DNA from: Chrysemys picta bellii
Lineage: Eukaryota
Assembly: GCF_011386835.1 (NCBI RefSeq)
Contig: NC_088802.1
Location: forward strand, 18,476,001 to 18,540,000
DNA: 64,000 bases
Direction: 5' to 3'
The position numbers and the translations under genes are program-made. The notes below the pieces were generated by a model. It was not told the DNA's origin. It did not search any database and worked only from the letters and a program-made list of their open reading frames with translations. Shown here one piece after another: positions 8,501 through 26,502 of the stretch. The first letter of the stretch is position 1; every line of letters starts with the position of its first letter.

Positions 8501-11500
8501 CAGTGATGATTCCCTGTCTACAGTTACACTGAGACCTGTCAGTTAGCCAGCTTTAAGTCCATATCATGTGTGCCAGGTTAATTTTATGTTGCTCTATTTT
8601 TTTTAATCAAAAAGTGAAAATGAACAGTGTAACCTCAGGTGTATTTACTGCACCTTCACTAAATCTACCCCTTCTTGTCACTGTCCCTTTGAAGCACAAA
8701 GCAGTGAATGTAAACTAATAATGAATAAATACACTCTGGACCATGATTAAAGGGGGTAGGCCTTTAGCCACAGTGCAGACCTCTTGATGGGTTAGCACAG
8801 CGGTTCTCAAACTTTAGCAACCCGAGAACCCCCATTTTGATTTAAACATTTTCGTGGACCCCCAAGCCTCCCCATCCCTGCTCAGTCCCAGGCCCCACCC
8901 TACTCCACCCCTTCCCCCAAGGCCCCACCCCACCCCTCCTCTTCCCTGCCTCTTTCCACCCCCTCCCCCGAGCATGCTGCGTCCCCACTCCTCCCTTTCC
9001 CTCCCAGCAGGAAGTGCTGGGAGGGAGGGGGAGGAGTTGAGGGAAGGAGCTGGAGGAGTTGATCAGTGAGGCCAGCAGACTGGGGGTCTGTGGACCCCAG
9101 TTTGAGAAACACTGGGTTAGCACAACTGCCTTGAAGCATTGACCCAAGACCCTTTCTTGGCCCAAACAAAGCAGGAGAAGAAGGCCGGCCTTGTGATGAA
9201 GGCACAGGAATGGGGTTCAAGAGACCCAGAGTCAGTTCTTGACATCGTCAGAGACTTTGGCCCTATCTTTAGGGAAATCACTTAGTCTCTCTGGCCTCAG
9301 TTCCTCATCCATGAAATGGGGATGATAGAACATACCTACTATAGACCCTGGTGAGTAGATCTTCATTAATATTTGTGAGGTGCCCAGACATTGGACCAAA
9401 AGAGGTCTGATCACCAACTTCATAGAGTTTATTTATTTCGATTGGAAAGATCCATAATTATACGCCTCTCCCACCACTCTGACAAATCACAGCACGAAAA
9501 CAAACTACAATCAAGACTGATACAAAGCAATAGAAAACCCCATCTCCATTTCGCTGCAGAGATTGGAGTTCTCACCTGTGGGAATTCATTCGCTGCCTGC
9601 TGGCACTTCCGCTCCATCTCACTGATCTGCTCACTGAGCCGGGAAATCTTCTCGGAGAGTTTGGTGACATTTTCATTCTGTATCCTCACAATCGTCTTGT
9701 CCAGCTCTTTTAGCTGGACCAGCAGGAGTCGCTCTTTTTCCTCCAGCATCTGGTACAGTTGTTGAAATAGAGACACAATCTTCTGCCTCTCGGCTTGTGT
9801 CTGTTTCTGTAACAAACAGGGGAAAGGGAAGTTCAGGGACCCAGAGTGGATAAGAGTAATAATTAAAAAAACAAAACAAACCCAGAGTTTATTTAAACTA
9901 TTTGTTTTTTAATTTGGTGCTGCTAGATCTTTTCTTTCTTCCCATTTTGTCCAGTTAAATTGCTCAAGCGGAGGTTTGTTCAGTTTCCTAGTTGTTGGGC
10001 AAATTTCAGATTTTACAGAGATGTTTTTTTGGAAGAGGTTTTATAAGGAAAACGTTCGTCTGGGCTCAAAAAGGCAAGTCCAGGGTCTTATTAGCAGGGA
10101 CATGAGGACAGTCAAGTGACATTTGATAAAACAGAGGGGAGACTTTAGACATCAATACATCTAAAAATGCAGCACTTGAGATACTGAGAAATAAAAATGC
10201 TCGGCCTGCTACTCTCCCCAGGGTTCCTAGAGCCTCACACTTGGCCCTGGTGGCTCTGACTGGTGCAGCCTCATATCTGACCTGATCCGTCTGTCCCCGG
10301 ATAAAAGGGGGTCTTCACATCTGAGTCCTTTCCAGTAGCAGGAAGGGCAGGACTCACAATGACCTTGGCAGAGGCTTGGTGAGAGCGGGCAGGGGAGGGG
10401 GAGAAAATAATTCAGAAGTTCTGAGGAAAACTCTGATCTTCCGACACCCCCAGAGCCAGCCATGTGCAAATGGGAACACTGGGACCCTGACTGAGACAGG
10501 GTCCCAGCAGGGTGCATAAGGGGCATGTGATGGAGAAGAAAAATGGGCCTCTCTCTTATGTGTGGGACTGGCCACACTTACAGACCTGCCAGGATAGCTC
10601 CAGACTAGTGGCGCTAGTGACAAGGGAAGAAGGAAGCAGGACCAGGGCCCTATGCCTGCACTGTCCAGTGCCCACGGCCCCTCTCCTGGGTCTGGCCCAG
10701 CCTCAATGCAGGGCAGGAAGTTACTGCCACAATCCAGCCCACGGAAAGGGACATACAAAGACACAGATCTGGCCACCGTGCCAGGGGCCTTCCACCCCCC
10801 TCACAGAGCAGGGTCCTCAATTCACCACACCATGCCAGGCCTCCTTTCCCCACCCAGCAGAGTCCCCAATTCATCCCACCATACCAGGGGCCCCAATTCA
10901 CCCCCTCATGCCAGGGACCCTTTCCCCACCCCACACAGAGCAGGACCCCCCCAATTAAGGGAGCTATGTCTCTTTCCTCCCTCTGGCTTCCCCTGCAGGC
11001 TAAGTACCCGCCCCATGACTCCCTCCACCAGGGACAGCAATTATTCCTTTTGTAATTCAGGGTGCGAACACAGTTACCCTCTATTGGGAAGATGAGCGGG
11101 GCTATTGTTATACTGCAATGTGTTAACAAGGGCCATCCACAGATGTGGGTGGCTCTCATTTTACCCTCTCTTTGAATGTCCCAGTTGTCCCCCAAATCTA
11201 TAGGGCTCTGGCTGTTGAGGCCTAGAGCATCCCCTGAAATTTTGGCATGGATCAGATGCAGTGTTCAGCGAAGCTCCATCAACAATTACCTCCCCTGTTC
11301 ACAGAGTGACACTCCCCCAGACACACAGCCCCCCAAATCCATGTCCCTGCTTGCGTAACAACAGGCACCTACCAGATGCTGCTGGCATCTCCCCTCTTCA
11401 GTCTCTTTAAATCCCAGCAGCTTTGCCCTCTCTTCCTTCAGGGTCTGCAGGCGGGTCTGGATTTGTGCCTGAGCCAAGAGAAAGGGTTTGAGTGGATTGA

Positions 11501-12079
11501 AGTATTTTGGTGTGTGAGGTTTTCTTTGCCTTGGGGGGTTTAGTCTACACAAAGTCCTGTGTCTGAAGGACTGTGTGACTCTTACTCTTTGTCCCCTGAA
11601 ATAACAGTGCTATTAAAACAAATAAAAAAGAGGCACGAACTCTCTAGCCCTAGCCAGAGCTTCCTTACCTTGTAATCCAAGCCAGCCTCCTCTATGGGAA
11701 CCACCGTGTGAGCTCTGTGAGCCTGGGACTCTCTGCAAACCACACAGATGGGGGTTTGATCATCTTCACAGAACAGTTTCAGAGCCTCCTGGTGTTTCTC
11801 ACACCTTCCCAAGCCTTTGGCTGCCTGGAAACTCAGCCCTTTGGCTATTTCGATAACTCTCGCCAGCTCCCTGTTGGGCCTGAAGTTTCTTTTCCGGGCA
11901 GTTTTTCTGCACTGGGGGCAGGAGAAGTTTCTAACCGATCCCTCCCAGCACTGGCTGATGCAGGCTCGGCAGAAATTGTGTCCGCATTGTATCGACACCG
12001 GGTCCTGAAAGTACTCCAGACAGATGGAGCAAGCCAGCTCTCTTTGCAGGGTCTCTACCCCAGAGCTCTCTGTGGCCAT
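4986..12079 (-). CDS. TRIM gene A: RING/B-box2/coiled-coil/B30.2 E3 ligase (TRIM7/27/39-like class), about 463 aa
   Basis: Exons with GT-AG sites and consistent phases: 12079-11669 (411), 11468-11373 (96), 9806-9576 (231), 7934-7912 (23), 7198-7086 (113), 5503-4986 (518). C3HC4 RING and B-box ligands are intact and the frame is open. No intact linker micro-exon was found. Confidence 0.88.
6234..6601. mobile_element. GC-rich hAT MITE (CATAGGCGCC-type TIR)
   Basis: Perfect 8-bp TSD CCTGGGGA; family members at 41009-41454 and 62152-62588 (near-matching 8-bp TSDs). Confidence 0.8.
7214..7506 (+). mobile_element. CR1 LINE 3' end
   Basis: ORF2 C-terminus remnant (LWNSLPEDV...[17 protein letters not shown]) plus a CR1-type 3' UTR ending TTCTTATGTTCT. 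Related copies at about 28104-28390 (+), 50605-50920 (-) and 59545-59770 (+). Confidence 0.85.
8043..8440 (-). mobile_element. CR1 LINE 3' fragment
   Basis: Reverse-oriented CR1 tail CATAGATT...GAAGGGACCATCGTGATCATCT. Confidence 0.6.
8798..9114. mobile_element. hAT (Charlie-type) MITE
   Basis: TIR CAGCGGTTCTCAAAC / GTTTGAGAAACACTG with a perfect 8-bp TSD GGTTAGCA; close relative at 53876-54223. Confidence 0.85.
9200..9400 (+). mobile_element. MIR/CORE-type SINE remnant
   Basis: CORE motif TCACTTAGTCTCTCTGGCCTCAGTTCCTCATCCATGAAATGGGGAT; similar remnants at about 20040-20150 and 52325-52445. Confidence 0.55.
11669..12079 (-). CDS. Gene A first coding exon: RING + B-box2
   Basis: MATESSGVETLQRELACSICLEYFQDPVSIQCGHNFCRAC...CPQC...[32 protein letters not shown]; donor AAG|GTAAGG. 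Confidence 0.95.
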
Positions 12080-12384
12080 GGCCAGGGCTCCCTGCACCCC
12101 ACGTGCAGCCAGCCCGCACCTTGCAAATGCAGCAGCGGCAGCGATTTGAAATCTTCACGTGTTCAGTGTCTGTTACAGGAAAGGGGCGTTTCCATGCCTG
12201 GGCTGCAACATGAGCCTTGGTTGCACAGGGCCGTCCCCCCTTCCCCGCCGCCCAGGGGTCTGGGCAGAAATGTGCGCGTTTCTCTCTGTGCAGGGAATAG
12301 CACGCGATGCCCAGGGGTGGCGCTCAGTTACACGCAGGGGAGAGAAGAAACACGTGCCTGGTGTTTGAGTTGGGGGGTTACATG

Positions 12385-13125
12385 TCGCTCTATGTCCCAG
12401 CCTCACCTATGGTCACATGGGTGGTGGGTATAATAGGCGAGGTGAGGCTAAGCCTCCCCTGCCCCAGGTCCTGGCCTTGCCCATGCTCCACCCTCTCCCC
12501 CCGAAGCCGGTGGGGGCCAGCAGGCAATCTGGCGCTGGGTCCGGCGAGCGGCCCAGGTGCCGGATATGGCCCAGGGTGGTTTGGCCAGGGGTCCTCTGGC
12601 TGCCGGGGGGTGGGGAGGAGGCTTGGGGCTCCAGCAGACAAGGAGCGGGCAATAGGGGTGGGGCCCTGTGGCTCGCCTCCCCAAAGGGGGGAGCTCACGC
12701 GCCACCCATGTATGGTAATGACCTAAAGGACGAGATCGCGGGTACCGGCTGCAGAAATGAGGTTTCTCCGCAGGGTGGCTGGGCTTGCTCTCCAAGACAG
12801 GGTGAGGAGATCGGCTATTCAGGAGAGCCTTGGAGTAGAGCCGCTATTCCTTCGGATCGAGAGGAGCCAGTGAGGGGGTTCGGGCTCCTGATAAGGATGC
12901 CCCCTGGGAGGCTTCCTTCGGATCTCTCCCAGGCACATCCCACAGTGCGGAGGCCCCGAGGCCGACCCAGGACACGCTGGAGGGATTATATCTCCCGGCT
13001 GGCTTGGGAACGCCGGGGAATCCCCCAGGAGGAGTTGGAACCTGTTGCGGAGGGAAAGGGAGGGCTGGTTCTCCCTACTCTCCATGCTGCCACTGCGACC
13101 CTCACCAGGGAAGCGGCATAAAGGG
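12385..13125 (+). mobile_element. RTE-clade LINE 3' fragment (Rex3/Expander-like), interrupted by a hAT MITE
   Basis: Frameshifted RT-ORF C-terminus: SLYVP-LTYGH / VMT*RTRSRVPAAEMRFLRRVAGLALQDRVRRSAIQESLGVEPLFLRIERSQ / FGLLIRMPPGRLP...RRPRGRPRTRWRDYISRLAWERRGIPQEELE. The RPRGRPRTRWRD motif is typical of RTE C-termini. Confidence 0.8.
12416..12710. mobile_element. GC-rich hAT MITE nested in the RTE fragment
   Basis: TIR CATGGGTGG...CCACCCATG with 8-bp flanks TATGGTCA / TATGGTAA; relative at 60715-61111. Confidence 0.7.
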
Positions 13126-13989
13126 AAAAGAAGTAGAAGATCAGGCTCAGAATGCGGCTCAGGCTGGGTGTCAGCCCCATGCAAGGGCACAAGGGGGAAT
13201 CGCCCACACGTGTCCCGCGACCAACGCACCTGTGGGTCTGGCACAGCTGGCAACTGGCCACCACACTCCTGCTGCTGCTGCTCCTCACCCACCCCCTCCC
13301 CCGCAAGCACAGGTGTGCCACTGGGAAGGGCCATCATCGGCTGGTGGTGTGGGGACGATAGGCCGTTGCCACCACTTGGAGCAGGGAGGGAAGCTGGTGC
13401 TGGAAGAGGAGTGCTGTGAGGCTAGGCCCCTGCCTTCCCCCTGCCTGCCCAGCTCCAGGGTGGGGGCCTGCGGAGCTGGCCCTGCCCCCTTTGCTGGTGC
13501 TCGTGTGTAGGGGGTGCAGATGACGGGGTAGCTGCTCTCCCGCTGGCTGGGATGGGAGGGGGAGCTGCCCTAACCCTGAACTTGGGGGGAGTCTGCAGCC
13601 AGCGGGGGTAGTCCCAGCTGGGCTGGGCTTTGAGGCCCCCACCCTAAGTGCAGGCTGGTGCATGACGTGGGAGGGGCATGACTGGGGGATGGCCCCTCTG
13701 GAGGCAGAATTAAATAATTGAATAGTTACAGGAAAGGGGCGTTTCCATGCCTGGGGCAGCCCTGGCTGGGCTGCAACGTGAGCCTTGGTTGAACAGAGCC
13801 GTTCCCCCCTTCTCCGTGGCTGGGGGACTGGACCCTGGGTCTCCCACCTCCCGTGGGGGCAGTGCCCGAACCACCAGACTACAGCCTCCTAACCACCAGG
13901 CTACAGCGTCAGGCCCTCTCTCTGGCCCAATGGTTATTTAAGTATTCGTCTACAGTGAAACAGCTTCAGCAGGAGAGATTGAGGGAGCC

Positions 13990-19272: not shown

Positions 19273-19279
19273 AACTTCT

Positions 19280-19476
19280 GTTATCACTGCCTGCTGTGTG
19301 CTTCATAATTTCTGTGGAGCAAAGGGAGAGACGTTTCCACAGGGGTGGGGGCAAGGCGGCAGATCAGCAGTCTACTAATTTTGAGCAGCCAGCTACCAGG
19401 GCTATCAGGAGCTCAGCAGGGAGCAATGCGGCTCAGGGTGGCTTTGAAAATCCATTTGATTAATGACCAGCGGTAA
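19280..19476 (+). pseudogene. Harbinger/PIF transposase C-terminal remnant (HARBI1-family-like)
   Basis: VITACCVLHNFCGAKGETF...(frameshift)...FEQPATRAIR...(frameshift)...AQQGAMRLRVALKIHL...*; ACCVLHN is the conserved C-terminal motif of Harbinger transposases. The 5' part is missing. Confidence 0.85.
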
Positions 19477-19741
19477 TGGGTGTTGCTTTTCTGCATTATG
19501 CCTGCCAGTAGTCTGAACCTTGCTTTGACGGCTGTGTGTGTAGTAATGTAACCTTGGAAATACACCCCTTACTTTGCTCTGAAAATGACTCCCAGCCCCC
19601 ACCTGCTGCAACCACTAGAGCCCCCTCCCTTGCTACAGCTGGGGAGACCACCCCACACTCCACTCAGTCCCTGGCCCCTCCAAAGGCACTGCCAGTGAGG
19701 GGGAAAACGATGCCCGGGGAATGGGCTGAGACCCTATAATG

Positions 19742-19966
19742 CAGGGGTTCTTAAACTGGGGGGCGGGACCCCTCAGGGGGGTCTTAAGATTATTACATGG
19801 GGGTTCATGAGTGGTCAGCCTCCATCCTAAACCTCGCTTTGCCTCCAGTATTTATAATGGTGTTAAATATATAAAAAAGTGTTTTTAATTTATAATGGGG
19901 GGGGGGTCGCACTCAGAGGCTTGCTATGTGAAAGGGGTCACCAGTACTAAAGTTTGAGAACCACTG
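19742..19966. mobile_element. hAT MITE nested in the Harbinger element
   Basis: TIRs CAGGGGTTCTTAAAC / GTTTGAGAACCACTG with a perfect TSD CTATAATG. Confidence 0.85.
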
Positions 19967-20309
19967 CTATAATGCATTCCTCATAGGGGCCACTCCAGTG
20001 GCTGCTGTGAGCGTGGGGGTAGTGTGGGCTAATGCTTAGAGCAAGAAGGGGGTGGGAGCCAGGATTCTTGGGTTCAATCTACAGGTCTGGCTCTGTGTGA
20101 CCTTGTTCACCCCCGTTGAGTGCCTCAGTTTCCCTCCCCTTTCACTTTGAAGTCTAAAGATGGTTTTGTTTTCAAGAAATGGACTTTTATTGCCCACAGA
20201 AACAGAAATATGTGCCACAGAGGTAAACCTTGGAAACCACAGGGGAATATACAACTGGGAGGGGGAATGCACATTCACCTTCTGTTTAAAAGTGCACAGG
20301 CCTGGCCTA

Positions 20310-22301
20310 TCACACGTCAGTGTATGGACGGCTGGGAGTCCATTCACCCTCCCCGGGGATTGAGTGGATGGGATACTGCATTGGGCCCCTACGCCAAGTG
20401 GAATGTGTGCGAGGGGGGGAGGGGAAGTAGGGCGATGTTAGAGTGCTGTTCTGGAGGGGCTGCAGAGGGAGTCGAGACTTAAAGTATCGCTCCTGAAGGT
20501 CAAGCAGACGCCTCAAAATGTCTGTTTGTTCCTTCAGAATCCCCAGCACCTCCTGCTGCATGGCACGCTCAGTCTCCTTGGCTTGCACCCTGCTCATAAC
20601 ATCCATTTTTTCTGAGACAGCAGTCCTTGGCTCGGTGTCCGCCCTCCCAGAGGCGTTCATTGTCTCATGAGGCGCGTCGGCGCGTGTTCTCTTCGGCCTT
20701 CGTCTTATCTGGAAGAGCCCCGCCGACAGTGTGGAGGGAGAGCCCCAGGCCGCGCTCCTGGCTGTAAAAGCACAAAGGAACCATTTCAGCGCAGACCCAG
20801 GGTCCAGGGCAGACGTCCTGCATAAAAATCACTCCCTTGAATCCCCGCAAATGTACAGCGGAACATTTGCATTTCTGCAAGGTGTTCATTGGACCGGTTT
20901 GCTGTTTTAGCCATGGGGAGTACGGCCCGGGGGCAGGGGCGTTGGGGCTTCTTCAGAAGTGAGGGTGGGGGAACACAGACCCCTGCCACCCAAATTACAG
21001 CCATGTTAAACAGCGGGTGGCCATGCCCCCCCGCCCCGATTCCGGCGCCCCTTCCCCATTGTGCTCCTGGGTTCTGGCACCCCTGTCCAGTGATGGAGGT
21101 TTTTAAGGCCCGGCTTGACAAAGCCCTGGCTGGGATGATTTAGTTGGGAATTGGTCCTGCTTTGAGCAGGGGGTTGGACTAGATGACCTCTTGAGGTCCC
21201 TTCCAACCCTGATATTCTATGATTCTATGGGAGTAGGACAAGCTATCACAAGGGCGTGGATGGAAGAGGAGGGAGAGAAGGGAAACAGGCACTAGTGTTT
21301 GCGGTTAGAGCAATTGAAATGAATACTAGCACCATCTCCCATAGGTGACCCTAGCTGATACCATGCTCCTGAGGGTAACAGAGGCGGAAAGGGAACAGCT
21401 GCTGCATGCGTTCAGGTATGGACTGGGTCCTTATGCTGCTATCCTGTGTACTGAGATGATGCCTGCTGAATCAATACTGGAGTGGCGCAGGAAAGTGTCC
21501 TACCGTGGTGGAAGAAATAAGGCAGCCCTCCCCAGAAACCTTCAACGGATTGCAGACTACCTCCAGGAAAGTTTCCTGAAGATCTCTATGGAAGATTTTT
21601 GGGACATCCCTGTGTACATAAACAATCTCTTTCGCAGGGCATCCTCTGCCTAGCTGGTCCGGGCACTGAGAAGCAGAGAGCCACTCTGCCTCCACTGATT
21701 ATTTCAATAAAAAATAGCAAATAAGAACATGTGTCCCTACAATATTAATGCTAAGTGTGTACTCACCAGAGGTACCCTCCCCAGCATCATGGCCAGCCAT
21801 GCTGCAGTGCTGCAACTGGCTGGACTGCTCCGGGGTTACAAACAGCTCCTGGCTCCCCCGGACAATGGATCCCCCGCTCGCCTGTCTCCAATTCGTCTCC
21901 TCCTCTTCCTCATCCAGCAGCTCCGACTCACCACTGCCTGCGGTGCCCTGGGACTCTGACTCCTCCGAGGACTCCAGGCGGCTCTTGGGGGTGGGGTCAT
22001 CGCAGAGGATAGCATGCAGCTCTTTGTAAAAGGGGCACGTCTGTGCTGCACCAGAGCGACCGTTCGCCTCCCTTGCCTTCTGGTACGCGAGCCGCAGCTC
22101 CTTTGCTTTCACGCGACACTGCAGCAGGTCCCTCTGGTAGCCCTTCTCCACCATGTCCCGAGAGATCTTCTCATAGACATCCGCATTTCTACGGCTGGAT
22201 TGGAGCTGTGCCTGCACAGCCTCTTCTCCCCACAGGCCAAGGAGATCCAACACCTCCCGCCTACTCCAGGCAGGAGAGCGTTTGGAGCGTGGACCCCGCA
22301 T
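20310..22301 (-). CDS. Harbinger-derived Myb/SANT-like DNA-binding protein (MSANTD-type), two exons, 328 aa
   Basis: Exon 1 22301-21767 (MRGPRSKRSPAWSRREVLDLLGLWGEEAVQAQLQSSRRNADVYEKIS...QCRVKAKELR...CPFYKELHAIL), donor TCTG|GTGAGT. Exon 2 20761-20310 after TTTTACAG, in frame (QIRRRPKRTR...LRRLLDLQE...). No stops; AATAAA at 20191-20186. Confidence 0.82.
21093..21229 (+). mobile_element. CR1 3' terminus inside the Myb/SANT intron
   Basis: ...GGGGGTTGGACTAGATGACCTCTTGAGGTCCCTTCCAACCCTGATATTCTATGATTCTATG; near-identical tail at 43850-43920. Confidence 0.9.
21345..21653 (+). other. Antisense exon-like ORF (102 codons) nested in the Myb/SANT intron
   Basis: Begins exactly at a CCATCTCCCATAG| acceptor, is open to TAG at 21653 and is followed by AATAAA at 21706-21711. 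The peptide is non-repetitive (WRRKVSYRGGRNKAALPRNLQRIADYLQESFLKISMEDFWDIPVYINNLF). Confidence 0.45.
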
Positions 22302-24061
22302 GCTCAGCTGGGCAGGCGAGCTCTCCACTCTGAACAAACAAGACATGGGAAATTCTAATGCTCCCGGTCCTTTAACAGGGGAGGGGTACCTGTGTACCCG
22401 GCTGCTGGGCAGCGGAGTTAAGAACGCTGACCAGAGCAGTCACCACGGAGCATTGTGGGACAACTCCCGGAGGCCACTTAAGCCGCCGGCATCGACTTCT
22501 TTAAGCGCTATGCTTCTCGCGGAGGCAGGGTAATAAAGTCGATGTAGTGGGCGAGTTACGTTGGCAGGAGGGACCTGGTAGTGTAGACGTGTACACAGTT
22601 AGGGCGACATAAACTGCCTTACGTCGACCTAACTCTGTAGTGTAGGCCAGGCCACAGGCAGGAAGTTCAAGCCTGAAGCCAAGCCGAGGAGTGTGTGATG
22701 GGGCTGGGAAGGGCCCAGGGAGCCTCTCTGATAGCCAGGGACTGACCATAATGCAGCCTTGGCCACGATCCCACTTCCTTATCACTCTGGCCACCTGCAG
22801 GGCCGGATTAACCTTGTGTGGGTCCGGCTCCAAACGTATTTATGGGCTCCCATGGAGGCAATGGAGCATGGCACAGGGAGGTCAGTCCCCAGAGCGAGGG
22901 GCCAGCCAGGGGCAATGGGGCATGGCAGGGGCGGCCCTGCTCCACCCAACCCAGGGCAAGAGCACTATTTACAAACCGGCAGTTGTCAGATGCACAGTGG
23001 CCCGCCCGGCCCTGTGCTTCCAGCATGTCCCTTCCTCTCGGGAGCAGGCCCATGCCGTGCCACACAGCCCCCCCCCCCCCAAACACAAATACCCCCACTG
23101 ACTCCCCCTATGCCAAGAGCCCCCCTGGACTCACTACGCCCAGCACCCCCCCCCCAGATCCACATCACAAATGCACAGCACCCTGCACACCACCCCTGCC
23201 CAGCACAGCCCCACCACAACTGCCCAGCACCCCACACAGAACCCCCACTCCCTAGTGCTCCAACACACACAGATCTTCAGACACCCCCAGATTCCCCAGA
23301 GACCCACTCCCCCATGCCCTGCCTCCCGGACGCACTCACCGGCCCTGCTGGGAGGCGACTGTGTCTGCCGGGCTGAGCTGGCAGCGCAGCCAGGGCTGGT
23401 CCCAGTGTTGGGAATCGCTCCGGCTCCTCAGACGTGGCGCAACTGCCCTGACCGGGCTCCCTAAGGACCCACTTGCCTGGAGGGGCCCAGCCAAGCCCCC
23501 CCACACTGTCCGAGACTGGCCAGGCTTCTGCACCAGTCCCAGGCGGCTCAGCTCCAGGGAGACAGGTGGGGCCCCACAGGTGGTGGGAAGCAGACTGCCC
23601 AGAGCCGGAAGTGCACTGCGGTCCGGCCAGGGGGCTAAGAGGAGCCGGCGGGTGGGGCCGGGGGTGGAGAGGAGCCCTGGGCCAGCGGAGAAGAGCAAGG
23701 GGTGGGTGGGGGGAGCCAGCAGGCAGGCAGGGTCTCAGGGCTCAGTGCAAGCAGAGCAGGCCAGGGCCCCTTCTGAGCATGGGCCCGGCTCCATGGTGCC
23801 ACTGGAAACCCGAGACTGGCCACCTGCTGCTGGATTCAATCAGCGTCTGCCCTGCCCCAGGGTTGCCCAGAGCTCCTGGGGAATCTGCCCCAGTCCCAGA
23901 GCCAGGCAAGGAGTCCCAGTCCCACTCCAGCCCACAGAGGGGAACAGAGACAGACACACACAATCCCCAACCAGCAGCACACGGCCCCAGAGAGACGCAC
24001 AAACTTCCCACACTGACATTCATCCCCACGGCCCTGCTGGGTAACAACACTGGGCACCTAC

Positions 24062-25240
24062 CAGGTACTCTGGGCTTCCTTTCTCTGGTCAGTTTCAATC
24101 CCAGGAGCTTTTCTCTCTCTTCCTTCAGAGCCTGCAGTCGGGTCTGGAATTGTTCCTGGGCAAAGGGACATGGGAGGTGCGGGGGAGGGTGTTAATTTTT
24201 TTTCTTTTGGAGCATGAGGCTCAATGATCCTCCCCTCCCCCCAACAATAACGCTGCTGTGCGGATTTAGCTTTCCAGTTTATTTAACCGAGCAGCAGGCC
24301 GGGAGAGCACCCCCATGGCAACTCACGGGCCAGGCCATGGAAGATGCAGGAACTGGGGGAGAACCCCTGGTCACAGAGGAGACCTAGTTTATCTTAGGAA
24401 TGCAAGCTGGGTCCAGGCCTCCAATGTACAAACCCTAGTGCCTCCCTATGTAGCAGTGGCCTCTCAGCGTGCTTGGTAGAGATCTCTTTCCTACAACTCT
24501 GCTCCCATATTGCTGATTGCTAGTAAAACAGAGGGAGGCAGGTTTGCTCCAAAAATTCATCATCAATTATTCCTAAGATTGAGGCCCAAAATCAGTAACT
24601 TCACCTAATGATCCTGATAAGATCATTGTAATTAACAAATAACAACCAATAAAGTGGCAGAAGATACGGAGTTCAGGTGAAAGGAACCCCAACATCTGAA
24701 CATCTGGAAATTCACAAGTAAGGTGCCAGACGCCATGAGGTCTGTCTGAACTGCTGAGTTTTGGCCTCTGAAATCTAGGTTTGGAAAAAAGCCACCGGTA
24801 CAAATATTGTTAGTGGGCAAATATTTCCTACCTTGTCCTCCTGGGCAGCCTCCTCTATGGGAACCACCCTGTGAGATCTGGCTCAGAGCCTTGGCTCTCT
24901 CACATACCACACAGATGGGGGTTTGGTCCACTTCACAGAAGAGTTTCTGGGCCTCCTGGTGTCTCTCACACACTCACTCGTCCTGAGCCTTTGGCCCTCT
25001 GGCTATTTCGATAACTCTCGCCAGTTCCCTGCTGGGCTGCAGGTTTCTCTGCTGGGCAGTTTCTCTGCACTGGGGGCAGGAGAAGTTTGGCTCCGACTCC
25101 CCCCAGCAATGGCTGATGCAAGCCCGGAAGAAGTTGTGCCCGCAGTGGATAGACACCGGCTCGTGGAAATACTCCAGGCAGATGGAACAAGAAGCTTCCT
25201 CCCGGAGACTTTCTGCAGTGCAGGGCTCTCTGCAGGCAAT
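24062..25240 (-). pseudogene. TRIM pseudogene B (RING/B-box exon plus second exon only)
   Basis: Exon 25240-24832: start codon reads ATT, RING Cys replaced by Phe (HNFFRAC), in-frame TGA at 24976-24974, frameshift in the B-box. Exon 24155-24062 is 94 nt instead of 96. No downstream TRIM exons found before gene A. Confidence 0.9.
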
Positions 25241-25639
25241 GGACCCCGGCGGGAAAGGGGTAACCAAGTTAGTTTGAATTTACAGCCCTCTGGCAGAGGA
25301 ACACAGGATGGAATTGGGTGTTTCCCTTCCTGGATCTGTCTCATTGGCTGAGCCGCGTCTGTGACTTCTCCAGGCCCCTGGGGGGATCTGGTGAGAAACG
25401 TGATCCTCTGTGTGCTGGGGACAGTGTTTAAACTCAGGTTAATAGGACATTTACACTGGAAATAAAGTCAGACAGAGAGATTTTGTTCCCTTAGGGGAAA
25501 ACAGACTTTAAAGGCAACGTCACTCTTTGAAAATAAATAAATAAATGGAATTCAGTTATTTGACTCCCAAATCACCACATAAGAACAGCCACAATGGCTC
25601 AGACAAGGTCCATTAAGCCCAGTGTCCTTCTGACAGTGG

Positions 25640-26502
25640 TAGGGTGACCATGTGACTGGTTTTTGATTGGAACACCCGGTCGAAAAGGGATCCTGGCAGC
25701 TCCAGTCAGCACTGCTGACCAGGCTGTTTACTGTCCGGCTAGCGGCGCCACTCAGCGGGGCTGGCAAGGTTCCCTGCTAGCCTCCATGACGTGCGGCTCC
25801 TGGGAAGCAGTTGGCATGTCCTCACTCCGGCTCCTATGCATAGGGGCAGCCAGTGGGCTCCACACGTTGCCCCCCGCCCCAAGCACCGCCCTCCCACACT
25901 TCGAACTCCCCAGCCCAGAGCCCCTTCCTGCACCCCAAATCCCTCATCCCCAGCCCCACATCAGAGCCTGGCACTCTCAGCCGGAGCCCTTACCCCCTGC
26001 CCCAGCCCGGAGCCCACTCCTGCACCCTGAACCCCTCATTTCTGGCCCCACCCCAGAACCCACCCCCCCAGCCCAGAGCCCGTATTTTCTCCCACACCCC
26101 AACCCTCTGCCTCAGTCCGGAGCCCCCTCCTGCATCCCAAACCCCTCATCCCTGGCCCCACCTCAAGCCCGCATCCCAAGCCCGAGCTCTCGCCCACTCT
26201 CGCACCCCAACCCCTTGCCTCAGCCTGGAGCCCCCTCCCTCACTCAGAACTCCTCATATCTGTCACCACCCTGGAGCCCGCACCCCCAGCCGGAACCTGC
26301 ACTCCAGCCCCCGGAGCCAGCCCAGTGAAAATGAGCAAGTGAGTGAGAGTGGGGAGAGCTAGTGACCGGGGGTGGGGGATGGAGTGAGGGGGACGCGAGG
26401 CCTCAGAGAAGGGGCGGGGCATGGGCGGGGTCTTGGAGGAGGGGCAGGGCAGGGTGGGGCAAGGGTGTTCAGTTTTGTGCCAGCAGAAAGTTGGCAACCC
26501 TA
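25640..26502. mobile_element. GC-rich hAT-type non-autonomous element inserted in an antisense CR1 tail
   Basis: TIR TAGGGTGACCA / TGGCAACCCTA; TSD GACAGTGG/GACTGTGG; the flanks rejoin as CR1 3' UTR. Confidence 0.75.

What the first reader, a model, noticed from the sequence alone, without database searches (positions are those of the whole stretch)
19280..22653. Harbinger copy with a destroyed transposase but a complete spliced Myb/SANT gene (domestication candidate)
Seen: the transposase survives as about 200 bp with two frameshifts. The element has since gained a hAT MITE and an intronic CR1 tail. Yet the 987-nt two-exon Myb/SANT CDS has no stop or frameshift and keeps its start, canonical splice sites, stop and AATAAA. 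Established: Harbinger elements encode a transposase plus a Myb/SANT protein, and both have been domesticated in vertebrates (HARBI1, NAIF1, MSANTD-type genes). Inference: this asymmetric decay suggests selection on the Myb ORF.
Basis: partly seen in the sequence, partly recalled or inferred. Interest (0 to 1): 0.7.

Follow-up and report, generated by a model that had tools for sequence, protein, structure and literature searches.

The report
Turtle gene domesticated from Harbinger transposon
A Myb-like gene left behind by a long-dead Harbinger transposon has been kept intact, spliced and expressed at the same chromosomal spot in hidden-necked turtles for very roughly 100 million years or more, so it is a turtle-specific host gene (RefSeq LOC101937139) and not a decaying transposon copy.

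Summary
On the minus strand a two-exon, 987-nt ORF (ATG 22301; intron 21766-20762; stop 20310) encodes a 328-aa protein with a Myb_DNA-bind_4 domain. It lies tail to tail with a ~200-bp C-terminal scrap of a DDE_Tnp_4 (Harbinger) transposase. The exon translations are identical to RefSeq LOC101937139 of Chrysemys picta bellii.

The domestication reading is supported.
- Syntenic orthologues with the same intron, splice sites and stop are intact in 11 durocryptodire species. A probable orthologue exists in Carettochelys.
- Codon models give omega 0.5-0.6 and reject omega = 1 (p = 1.5e-4). After correcting for the local CpG and transition bias, omega is about 0.75.
- The ORF signal is stronger. 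About 10 nonsense and about 14 frameshifting changes were expected from the intron and flank rates. None is seen, and all five coding indels are in frame.
- A neutral control ORF inside the intron is broken in two of eight species.
- Contigs of four runs (probably RNA) and a Mauremys transcript show the predicted splice plus TRIM-derived 5' exons.

No sea-turtle orthologue is annotated. The function is inferred only. The scan noted a similar "Myb intact, transposase dead" case on another piece of this genome (s1-318459, unchecked). This is a new member of a known kind (NAIF1, MSANTD1-4).

The parts
24832..25120 (-). Putative first 5' non-coding exon, made from the RING/B-box exon of a decayed TRIM gene copy. 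Its 5' end is not defined.
   Evidence: The joint 24154->24831 (CT..AC, which is GT..AG on the minus strand) is seen in contigs of all 4 runs. The sequence reads as a TRIM RING/B-box exon with stops. It evolves at the neutral rate. No single contig links it to the Myb exons, and paralogous TRIM transcripts could contribute to it.
24062..24154 (-). 5' non-coding exon 0, derived from a TRIM coiled-coil exon and spliced onto the Myb exon 1.
   Evidence: Joints 22329/22330->24062/24077 are seen in 3 of 4 runs. The same exon is present in the Mauremys transcript L006. It shows 1-3% divergence within Testudinoidea, against 7-10% in the flanking introns. In the window and Emys the split codon TG|A makes an in-frame stop.
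21767..22329 (-). Exon 1: 28 nt of 5' UTR, ATG at 22301, then 178 codons plus one base.
   Evidence: The exon translation is identical to P0121.
22008..22274 (-). Myb/SANT-like (trihelix) DNA-binding domain, protein residues 10-98.
   Evidence: Pfam PF13837, E = 4e-19. The AlphaFold2 helical domain has pLDDT 80-92. The profile hits the GT-1 trihelix domain in the PDB at E = 1.3e-8. The Foldseek top hit is 2jmw. This is the lowest-omega part of the gene, at 0.57.
20762..21766 (-). Phase-1 GT-AG intron of the Myb gene.
   Evidence: The joint 20761->21767 is seen in contigs of 4 runs from 4 studies. The splice sites are conserved in 9 species.
21345..21653 (+). Antisense 102-codon ORF nested in the intron (the family's 'third gene' exon according to other notes of the scan). 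Here it is a neutral relic.
   Evidence: It diverges at the intron rate and is broken in Gopherus and Macrochelys. One contig shows a plus-strand splice 20881->21345 (X2 record 18).
21101..21234 (+). CR1 3' tail insertion, specific to the Chrysemys lineage.
   Evidence: Absent from Trachemys, Emys and all other species examined. It ends in two ATTCTATG octamers. Contig depth over it is very high, typical of a repeat.
20181..20761 (-). Exon 2: two bases plus 149 codons plus the stop (20310-20312), then the 3' UTR with AATAAA at 20186-20191.
20485..20634 (-). A single long helix (protein residues 225-274), a candidate coiled coil or partner-binding helix.
   Evidence: AlphaFold2 helix 225-274 with pLDDT 86-96. 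The core is invariant in 8 durocryptodires and conserved in Carettochelys. obsN/expN is 0.60.
19742..19966 (.). hAT-type MITE inserted in the 3' flank, flanked by the 8-bp duplication CTATAATG.
   Evidence: Direct repeat at 19734-19743 and 19967-19976. Present in the window, Trachemys and Emys only.
19274..19480 (+). C-terminal remnant of the PIF/Harbinger (DDE_Tnp_4) transposase, convergent with the Myb gene and read in three successive frames.
   Evidence: three frames; conserved in all durocryptodire loci. (best library hit is a DDE_Tnp_4 protein, aligned at the end of that domain). There is no direct Pfam hit.

Best explanation
This is a host gene that arose when one Harbinger insertion was immobilised, before the split of Testudinoidea and Chelydridae and probably before the split of soft-shelled and hard-shelled cryptodires. 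The transposase was truncated to its last ~65 codons early on. The Myb-like gene was retained as a single-copy, syntenic gene embedded in a TRIM gene cluster, and it is transcribed with 5' non-coding exons taken from a decayed TRIM copy.

Shown here: orthology and synteny; intact ORFs; conserved splice sites and stop; frame-specific purifying selection; spliced contigs.

The selection is strongest on the DNA-binding domain and the long helix. It is absent on the acidic linker.

Inferred mechanism: the protein binds DNA through its trihelix (Myb/SANT-like) domain and enters the nucleus through a basic patch at the start of exon 2. Its ~50-residue helix dimerises or recruits a partner. It would therefore act as a sequence-specific adaptor or transcription/chromatin regulator, as proposed for NAIF1 and the MSANTD proteins.
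For: Identity and annotation. The exon translations equal P0121, which is LOC101937139.

Orthology.
- The loci are colinear over more than 20 kb in Emys, Chelonoidis, Pangshura, Mauremys and Macrochelys. The gene lies between TRIM genes.
- Trachemys, Malaclemys, two Gopherus species and Mauremys mutica have 324-328-aa cluster members.
- The 11 orthologues form a clade with 100/99 support that follows the species tree. Its sister is Carettochelys P0014.
- P0014 has colinear flanks on both sides and the same intron position.

Integrity. All nine gene models translate straight from the genome with a GT-AG, phase-1 intron. Chelonoidis lost the ATG but has a new one two codons upstream.

Selection.
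- GY94 omega is 0.50 and 0.61; the LRT against omega = 1 gives p = 1.5e-4. With Carettochelys, omega is 0.33 and 0.48, p = 3e-17.
- Using the local neutral spectrum, obsS/expS is 1.04 and obsN/expN is 0.78 (p = 0.001).
- 9.8 nonsense events were expected and none was seen (P = 6e-5).
- 14.3 frameshifting indels were expected and none was seen (P = 6e-7).
- The coding indels of 3, 6, 9, 9 and 12 nt are all in frame.

Control. The nested ORF in the same intron is broken in 2 of 8 species.

Expression. The exact intron joint is seen in contigs of 4 runs from 4 studies. The three-exon Mauremys transcript L006 matches its genome at 100%.

Fold..
Against: - Selection on amino-acid sequence is weak. 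The spectrum-corrected omega is about 0.75, and about half of the protein is disordered and evolves neutrally.
- The species were found through annotated proteins, which favours intact copies.
- No orthologue appears among the annotated proteins of five sea-turtle species, Chelydra or Terrapene. The gene may therefore be dispensable or lost in some lineages.
- The four runs are only guessed to be RNA.
- Nothing here tests DNA binding, partners or phenotype.
- Carettochelys orthology rests on a few short colinear matches.
Confidence: 0.82

Rival explanations
1. The protein works on the turtles' still-active Harbinger families. It would be a host-encoded decoy or repressor that occupies transposon ends or titrates their transposase, or conversely a helper. 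It would not be a general gene regulator.
For: The putative recognition helix and most core residues of the Myb domain are invariant between this gene and the multi-copy transposon-type paralogues (invariant columns R57, D58, Q61, C62, K65, E68, L69, Y73, K75). The genome holds more than 100 annotated young paralogues. Harbinger Myb-like proteins bind transposon ends and the transposase N-terminus (Sinzelle et al. 2008, as cited in PMC9392472).
Against: Overall identity to the transposon-type proteins is only 39-45%. The gene predates the young families by a very long time. NAIF1, the best-studied analogue, no longer binds its source transposon's sequence. Nothing here tests this idea.
Confidence: 0.12
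2. It is a neutral relic. The ORF has simply not been hit yet, because turtle genomes evolve slowly and only intact copies get annotated.
For: Exon substitution rates are close to the intron rates. The linker has omega of about 1. A neutral 309-nt ORF nearby is still open in 6 of 8 species. Sampling went through protein databases.
Against: About 24 frame-breaking events were expected on the 8-species tree and none was found. All 11 annotated testudinoid and chelydrid orthologues are intact. The start codon was compensated in Chelonoidis. The LRT rejects omega = 1. The probable Carettochelys orthologue is intact despite 27-33% nucleotide divergence.
Confidence: 0.03
3. The conserved unit is the transcript or a regulatory element of the TRIM cluster, and the protein is irrelevant.
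For: The 5' exon 0 is more conserved than the coding exons. The gene sits inside a TRIM cluster and uses TRIM-derived exons.
Against: The constraint is frame-specific. Only in-frame indels are tolerated, there are no stops in this one frame, and synonymous sites evolve at the neutral rate while non-synonymous sites in the Myb domain do not.
Confidence: 0.03

Closest known systems
MSANTD1-4 and NAIF1 (vertebrate genes domesticated from Harbinger Myb-like genes; PMC9392472)
   Same: These genes also derive from the second (Myb-like) gene of a Harbinger transposon. They are single-copy and syntenic, keep a trihelix DNA-binding domain, are under negative selection and are expressed. As in MSANTD1-4, no partner transposase is retained at the locus.
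   Different: Those genes date to the base of jawed vertebrates or sarcopterygians, about 430-500 Mya. This one is restricted to turtles (cryptodires). It is only 39-55% identical to any other turtle Myb-like protein and shows much weaker amino-acid constraint. No orthology to any MSANTD gene was tested or claimed. NCBI's names for the orthologues (MSANTD7-like, ZSCAN29) are similarity labels.
Myb-like protein of autonomous Harbinger elements (e.g. Harbinger3_DR; Sinzelle et al. 2008, as cited in PMC9392472)
   Same: Same domain family (PF13837). The two-exon layout is shared with the turtle paralogues. The gene is convergent with a DDE_Tnp_4 transposase gene. A long C-terminal helix is conserved across the paralogues.
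   Different: This copy is immobile, its transposase is reduced to a ~200-bp scrap, it is single-copy, and it is transcribed from host (TRIM-derived) 5' exons. Terminal repeats and target duplications of the original element were not identified.
Arabidopsis GT-1 trihelix DNA-binding domain (PDB 2jmw, 2ebi)
   Same: It is the closest solved structure by profile (E = 1.3e-8) and by fold (Foldseek top hit, TM 0.69 on the target).
   Different: Only the ~85-residue domain is shared, and the relationship is distant (28% identity over 70 columns).
Co-domesticated Harbinger pairs (HARBI1-NAIF1; Arabidopsis ALP1-ALP2 and HDP1-HDP2; insect DPLG pairs, PMC9710019)
   Same: A Harbinger-derived Myb-like protein is retained as a host factor.
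   Different: In those cases the transposase-derived partner was kept too. Here the linked transposase was destroyed before the durocryptodire radiation. Whether the protein pairs with HARBI1 or another transposase-derived protein is unknown.

Membership tests
Myb_DNA-bind_4 / trihelix DNA-binding proteins (PF13837) | Match to the family profile above Pfam's gathering score | tested here: met
   69.2 bits against a cut-off of 27, E = 4e-19, covering the profile 2-89/89.
Myb_DNA-bind_4 / trihelix DNA-binding proteins (PF13837) | Helical trihelix fold related to solved members | tested here: met
   The AlphaFold2 domain 11-99 has pLDDT 80-92. GT-1 is the top hit by profile and by Foldseek.
Myb_DNA-bind_4 / trihelix DNA-binding proteins (PF13837) | Sequence-specific DNA binding | not testable with these tools
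   This needs DAP-seq, EMSA or ChIP.
PIF/Harbinger transposon copy (origin of the locus) | DDE_Tnp_4 transposase gene next to a Myb-like gene | tested here: met
   Only the last ~65 codons remain, in three frames. The best hit in a 1.84-billion-protein library (E = 1.8e-4) carries DDE_Tnp_4 and aligns at the end of that domain. Direct Pfam scans of the scrap were negative.
PIF/Harbinger transposon copy (origin of the locus) | Terminal inverted repeats and a 3-bp target-site duplication | not tested
No family consensus or empty site was available. The 22347-22760 end has no second copy in the window.
PIF/Harbinger transposon copy (origin of the locus) | Multi-copy relatives of the Myb-like ORF in the same genomes | tested here: met
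   417 proteins at E <= 1e-30. More than 100 are annotated in C. picta at 39-45% identity, and they form a separate clade with short tips.
Domesticated transposon gene | Single-copy orthologues at a syntenic position across distant species | tested here: met
Domesticated transposon gene | ORF kept intact under purifying selection | tested here: met
   The selection is weak on residues and strong on frame integrity.
Domesticated transposon gene | Transcribed and correctly spliced | tested here: met
   Intron joint in contigs of 4 runs. Mauremys transcript L006. The run type 'RNA' is only a guess in the run table.
Domesticated transposon gene | A host function (phenotype, binding sites, partners) | not testable with these tools

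The most novel reading that the evidence does not exclude
A turtle-specific transcription factor was born from a Harbinger Myb-like gene that captured the promoter and first exons of a dead TRIM gene inside an immune-type TRIM cluster. It keeps the DNA-recognition helix of the still-active turtle Harbinger families. It would therefore act as a host-encoded guardian that reads Harbinger and MITE ends scattered through the genome, either restraining transposition or wiring those MITEs into a TRIM-like (possibly interferon-responsive) expression programme.
Probability: 0.1. Interest if true: 0.7.

Novelty: new member of a known kind. Interest (0 to 1): 0.5.

Why it matters
Recurrent domestication of Harbinger Myb-like genes is documented at the base of vertebrates, in insects and in plants. 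Lineage-specific, fairly recent cases in amniotes are hardly described. No paper in the searched library mentions this gene.

This locus still carries several traces of its origin: the transposase scrap, the family's nested antisense exon as a neutral relic, datable later insertions, and a captured TRIM promoter region. Related Harbinger families still appear active in the same genomes. That combination makes it a usable natural experiment on three questions: how one gene of a two-gene transposon becomes a host gene, what minimal constraint looks like early after domestication (frame integrity first, residues later), and whether such genes interact with their still-mobile relatives.

Tried and rejected
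- Pfam scans of the transposase scrap gave nothing. A phmmer search of PDB sequences gave only noise. A findings look-up by sequence was blank. The full HMMER scan finally placed the scrap.
- Emydura P0009 and Malaclemys P0007 could not be traced to contigs. Pleurodire orthology is therefore open.
- Pelodiscus P0137 looked like an orthologue by name and length. It shares no flank synteny and has a different acceptor. It groups with Carettochelys P0011 and not with the focal clade, so it was left out of the codon tests.
- My first two neutral references were inflated by misaligned Macrochelys sequence. They are superseded, where synonymous sites match expectation (1.04).
- ORFs downstream of the Carettochelys gene showed no transposase.
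- An N-terminal fusion with the TRIM exons was considered and rejected for this genome, because the split codon at the exon 0/exon 1 junction is TGA. In non-emydids that codon is TGC, so an extension there is not excluded.
- Joined step left out: I never assembled the two exons into one spliced sequence. All searches, translations, codon alignments and likelihoods were done exon by exon and the results summed. The split codon was left out of the tests. Whole-protein queries used the database proteins P0001 and P0121 by id.
Full report
**What is there**

On the minus strand an ORF starts at ATG 22301 and runs to a donor CTG|GTGAGT after 21767. It resumes after the acceptor ttttacag| at 20761 and ends at TGA 20312-20310. 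The two exons are 535 and 452 nt, 987 nt in all, with a phase-1 intron. Both exon frames are open. AATAAA lies at 20191-20186.

Exon 1 carries a Myb_DNA-bind_4 domain (Pfam E = 4e-19). The two exon translations are identical to P0121, which is XP_008165363.2, 'uncharacterized protein LOC101937139' of Chrysemys picta bellii. The gene is therefore already annotated, but it has no described origin. No paper in the searched library mentions it.

Everything below was done exon by exon, or with database proteins by id.

**The transposon context**

Downstream and convergent, 19274-19480 (+) reads in three successive frames like the C-terminus of a Harbinger transposase. Pfam does not see it. A full HMMER scan of 1.84 billion proteins gave three hits at E 2e-4 to 9e-4. 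The best hit has a DDE_Tnp_4 domain (2.9e-28), and the match sits at that domain's very end.

The insertion at 19742-19966 has an 8-bp target duplication, as hAT elements do. It is confined to the emydids. The 134-bp CR1 tail at 21101-21234 is found in this genome only. It is absent even from Trachemys and Emys. The outer limits of the old element (19280 and 22653) could not be verified.

**Orthology**

A word search with exon 1 and a second search with P0001 returned a tight group at 82-98% identity. After that group there is a gap down to 55% or less.

Cluster members add more species. In total there are 324-328-aa proteins in Chrysemys, Trachemys, Malaclemys, Emys, Chelonoidis, two Gopherus species, two Mauremys species, Pangshura and Macrochelys.

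- The fetched loci are colinear with the window over more than 20 kb, and the gene lies between TRIM genes.
- In a protein tree the 11 orthologues form a clade with 100/99 support that mirrors the species tree.
- The more than 100 annotated C. picta paralogues (39-45% identity; transposon ORFs carrying odd borrowed names) form a separate clade with short tips.
- The sister of the orthologue clade is Carettochelys P0014 (55% identity) plus a Logan contig protein, P0133 (from a 1.3-kb contig; not examined further). The Carettochelys locus shares colinear matches upstream (window 24300-23974) and downstream (window 4429 down to 1). It also shares part of the intron, the same donor and acceptor, and the C-terminal residues.
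- I take P0014 as a probable orthologue. That places the origin before the Trionychia-Durocryptodira split. The topology follows 10.1101/2021.10.14.464421. My figure of roughly 100 My or more for the durocryptodire node is from memory.
- Pelodiscus P0137 is not syntenic and was excluded.

**Integrity**

In nine species the model translates directly from the genome, with GT-AG and a phase-1 intron at the same place. Chelonoidis has ATA at the usual start but gained an ATG two codons upstream.

**Selection**

Raw substitution rates in the exons are close to those in the intron, so the test needs care.

- NG86 pairwise dN/dS is 0.37-0.73.
- IQ-TREE GY+F3X4 on a fixed species tree, run per exon, gives omega 0.50 and 0.61 for eight durocryptodires. 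The summed LRT against omega = 1 is 17.7 (df 2, p = 1.5e-4). With Carettochelys added, omega is 0.33 and 0.48 (p = 3e-17).

CpG hypermutability inflates dS, so I took CpG-transition, other-transition and transversion rates from 1,274 well-aligned intron and 3'-flank sites on the same tree (0.240 events per site). I then applied those rates to the coding sequence.

| Measure | Result |
|---|---|
| Synonymous changes, observed/expected | 1.04 |
| Non-synonymous changes, observed/expected | 0.78 (p = 0.001) |
| N/S omega | 0.75 (p = 0.02) |
| Observed/expected non-synonymous changes, Myb domain | 0.57 |
| Same ratio, long helix | 0.60 |
| Same ratio, acidic linker | about 1.0 |

Earlier versions of this calculation used partly misaligned Macrochelys sequence and are superseded.

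The frame signal is much stronger.

| Event type | Expected in the CDS | Observed | P |
|---|---|---|---|
| Nonsense changes | 9.8 | 0 | 6e-5 |
| Frameshifting small indels | 14.3 | 0 | 6e-7 |

The indel expectation comes from the neutral reference, which has 24 small indels, 20 of them not multiples of three, in about 1.37 kb. The five coding indels (3, 6, 9, 9 and 12 nt) are all in frame.

There is an internal control in the same intron. The 309-nt antisense ORF at 21345-21653 evolves at the intron rate. It is broken in Gopherus (a stop and a frameshift) and in Macrochelys (a 273-bp insertion and stops).

Two caveats apply. The species were reached through annotated proteins. No orthologue is annotated in five sea-turtle species, Chelydra or Terrapene. 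I could not tell loss from missing annotation.

**Expression**

Fourteen small runs hold 41-63% of the sampled words of a stretch of which about 55% is exon (my arithmetic from the exon coordinates). Four large runs, which I take for DNA runs (kind not recorded), hold 85-90%.

Contigs of four of the small runs, from four studies and two organism labels, were laid on 19900-25800.

- All four show the joint 20761->21767 with GT..AG ends.
- Three of them join 22329 to an upstream exon ending at 24062.
- All four show 24154->24831.

The run kind is a guess, but intron-less joints at canonical sites are what cDNA gives. Independently, a 1,203-nt Logan contig (L006) matches the Mauremys reevesii genome at 100% as three exons. 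These are the orthologue of exon 0, then exon 1 from the same acceptor, then exon 2.

The 5' exons are pieces of a decayed TRIM gene: a RING/B-box exon with stops and a coiled-coil exon. Exon 0 is unusually conserved, at 1-3% against 7-10% in the neighbouring introns. In this genome the junction codon is TGA, so the ORF cannot extend upstream. In non-emydids it is TGC.

**Protein**

AlphaFold2 with a 45-sequence alignment gives four parts:
- a confident helical domain at residues 11-99;
- a disordered acidic stretch at 102-221;
- one long helix at 225-274 (pLDDT 86-96);
- a disordered proline-rich tail.

The domain's closest solved relative is the GT-1 trihelix DNA-binding domain. Core residues of the third helix are invariant even against the transposon-type paralogues.

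**Interpretation**

The locus is a lineage-specific domesticated Harbinger Myb-like gene. It is of the same kind as NAIF1 and MSANTD1-4 (PMC9392472), but far younger and under lighter residue constraint.

The proposed function is a DNA-binding adaptor or regulator that dimerises or recruits a partner through its helix. That is inference from the domain family and from what is known of Harbinger Myb-like proteins. A role directed at the turtles' own active Harbinger elements is a live minority alternative.

Other notes of this scan pointed me to the TRIM leader (s1-322516) and the nested ORF (s1-322545, s1-325556, s1-314109). I checked both with my own data. A similar 'Myb intact, transposase dead' note exists for another piece of this genome (s1-318459), and I did not examine it.

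Noticed in passing
window 20733-20881 and 21345-21682 (+): One contig (run X2, record 18) joins these two stretches across a canonical GT..AG intron on the plus strand. An antisense transcript containing the nested 102-codon ORF therefore seems to be made. The ORF itself evolves neutrally and is broken in Gopherus and Macrochelys.
   Followed up: partly
window 24062-24154 (-): The TRIM-derived 5' exon 0 is far more conserved (1-3% divergence in Testudinoidea) than its flanking introns (7-10%) and than the coding exons. The reason is unknown; it could be a UTR element or a regulatory site. Pangshura has lost its acceptor AG.
   Followed up: partly
window 22329 / 24062-24063: The codon split across the exon 0/exon 1 junction is TGA in the window and Emys but TGC in Chelonoidis, Pangshura, Mauremys and Macrochelys. 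An N-terminal extension is therefore possible outside the emydids. An older 349-aa Chelonoidis model (P0126) may reflect this.
   Followed up: no
protein P0134 (Chelonoidis abingdonii, same 8.6-Mb contig as the orthologue P0003): A 407-aa protein combining Myb_DNA-bind_4 with a KRAB domain. It is 49% identical to the focal protein and represents a 90%-identity cluster of 24 members. It may be another Harbinger Myb-like domestication, this one fused to KRAB.
   Followed up: no
proteins P0011 (Carettochelys) and P0137 (Pelodiscus; locus L008): These two trionychian Myb-like proteins form a tight pair with short branches on a long stem, separate from the focal clade. They are a second candidate for a conserved Harbinger-derived gene in soft-shelled turtles.
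   Followed up: no
C. picta proteome: More than 100 annotated proteins at 39-45% identity are evidently transposon Myb-like ORFs. They carry borrowed names such as 'SRRM2 protein homolog rsr-2-like', 'pre-mRNA-splicing factor CWC22 homolog', 'G1/S-specific cyclin-D3 isoform X1' and 'adapter molecule crk'. This is annotation contamination by Harbinger ORFs and exon traps.
   Followed up: no
window 20587 (residue 237) and other sites: The reference carries Val where contigs of all four runs and every other species have Ala. The older RefSeq protein P0001 differs from the window at two C-terminal residues. There is thus amino-acid polymorphism within the species.
   Followed up: partly
window 21101-21234: The CR1 tail insertion is absent from Trachemys and Emys. 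CR1 retrotransposition therefore continued after the Chrysemys-Trachemys split.
   Followed up: partly
L003 (Macrochelys) intron, about 10900-13630: The Macrochelys intron has gained a 273-bp and a ~2.2-kb insertion, yet the exons and splice sites are untouched.
   Followed up: no
proteins P0127 and P0128 (Mauremys mutica): Two separately named 324-aa proteins of the orthologue cluster lie on one 83-Mb contig. This could be a tandem duplicate or a doubly annotated locus.
   Followed up: no
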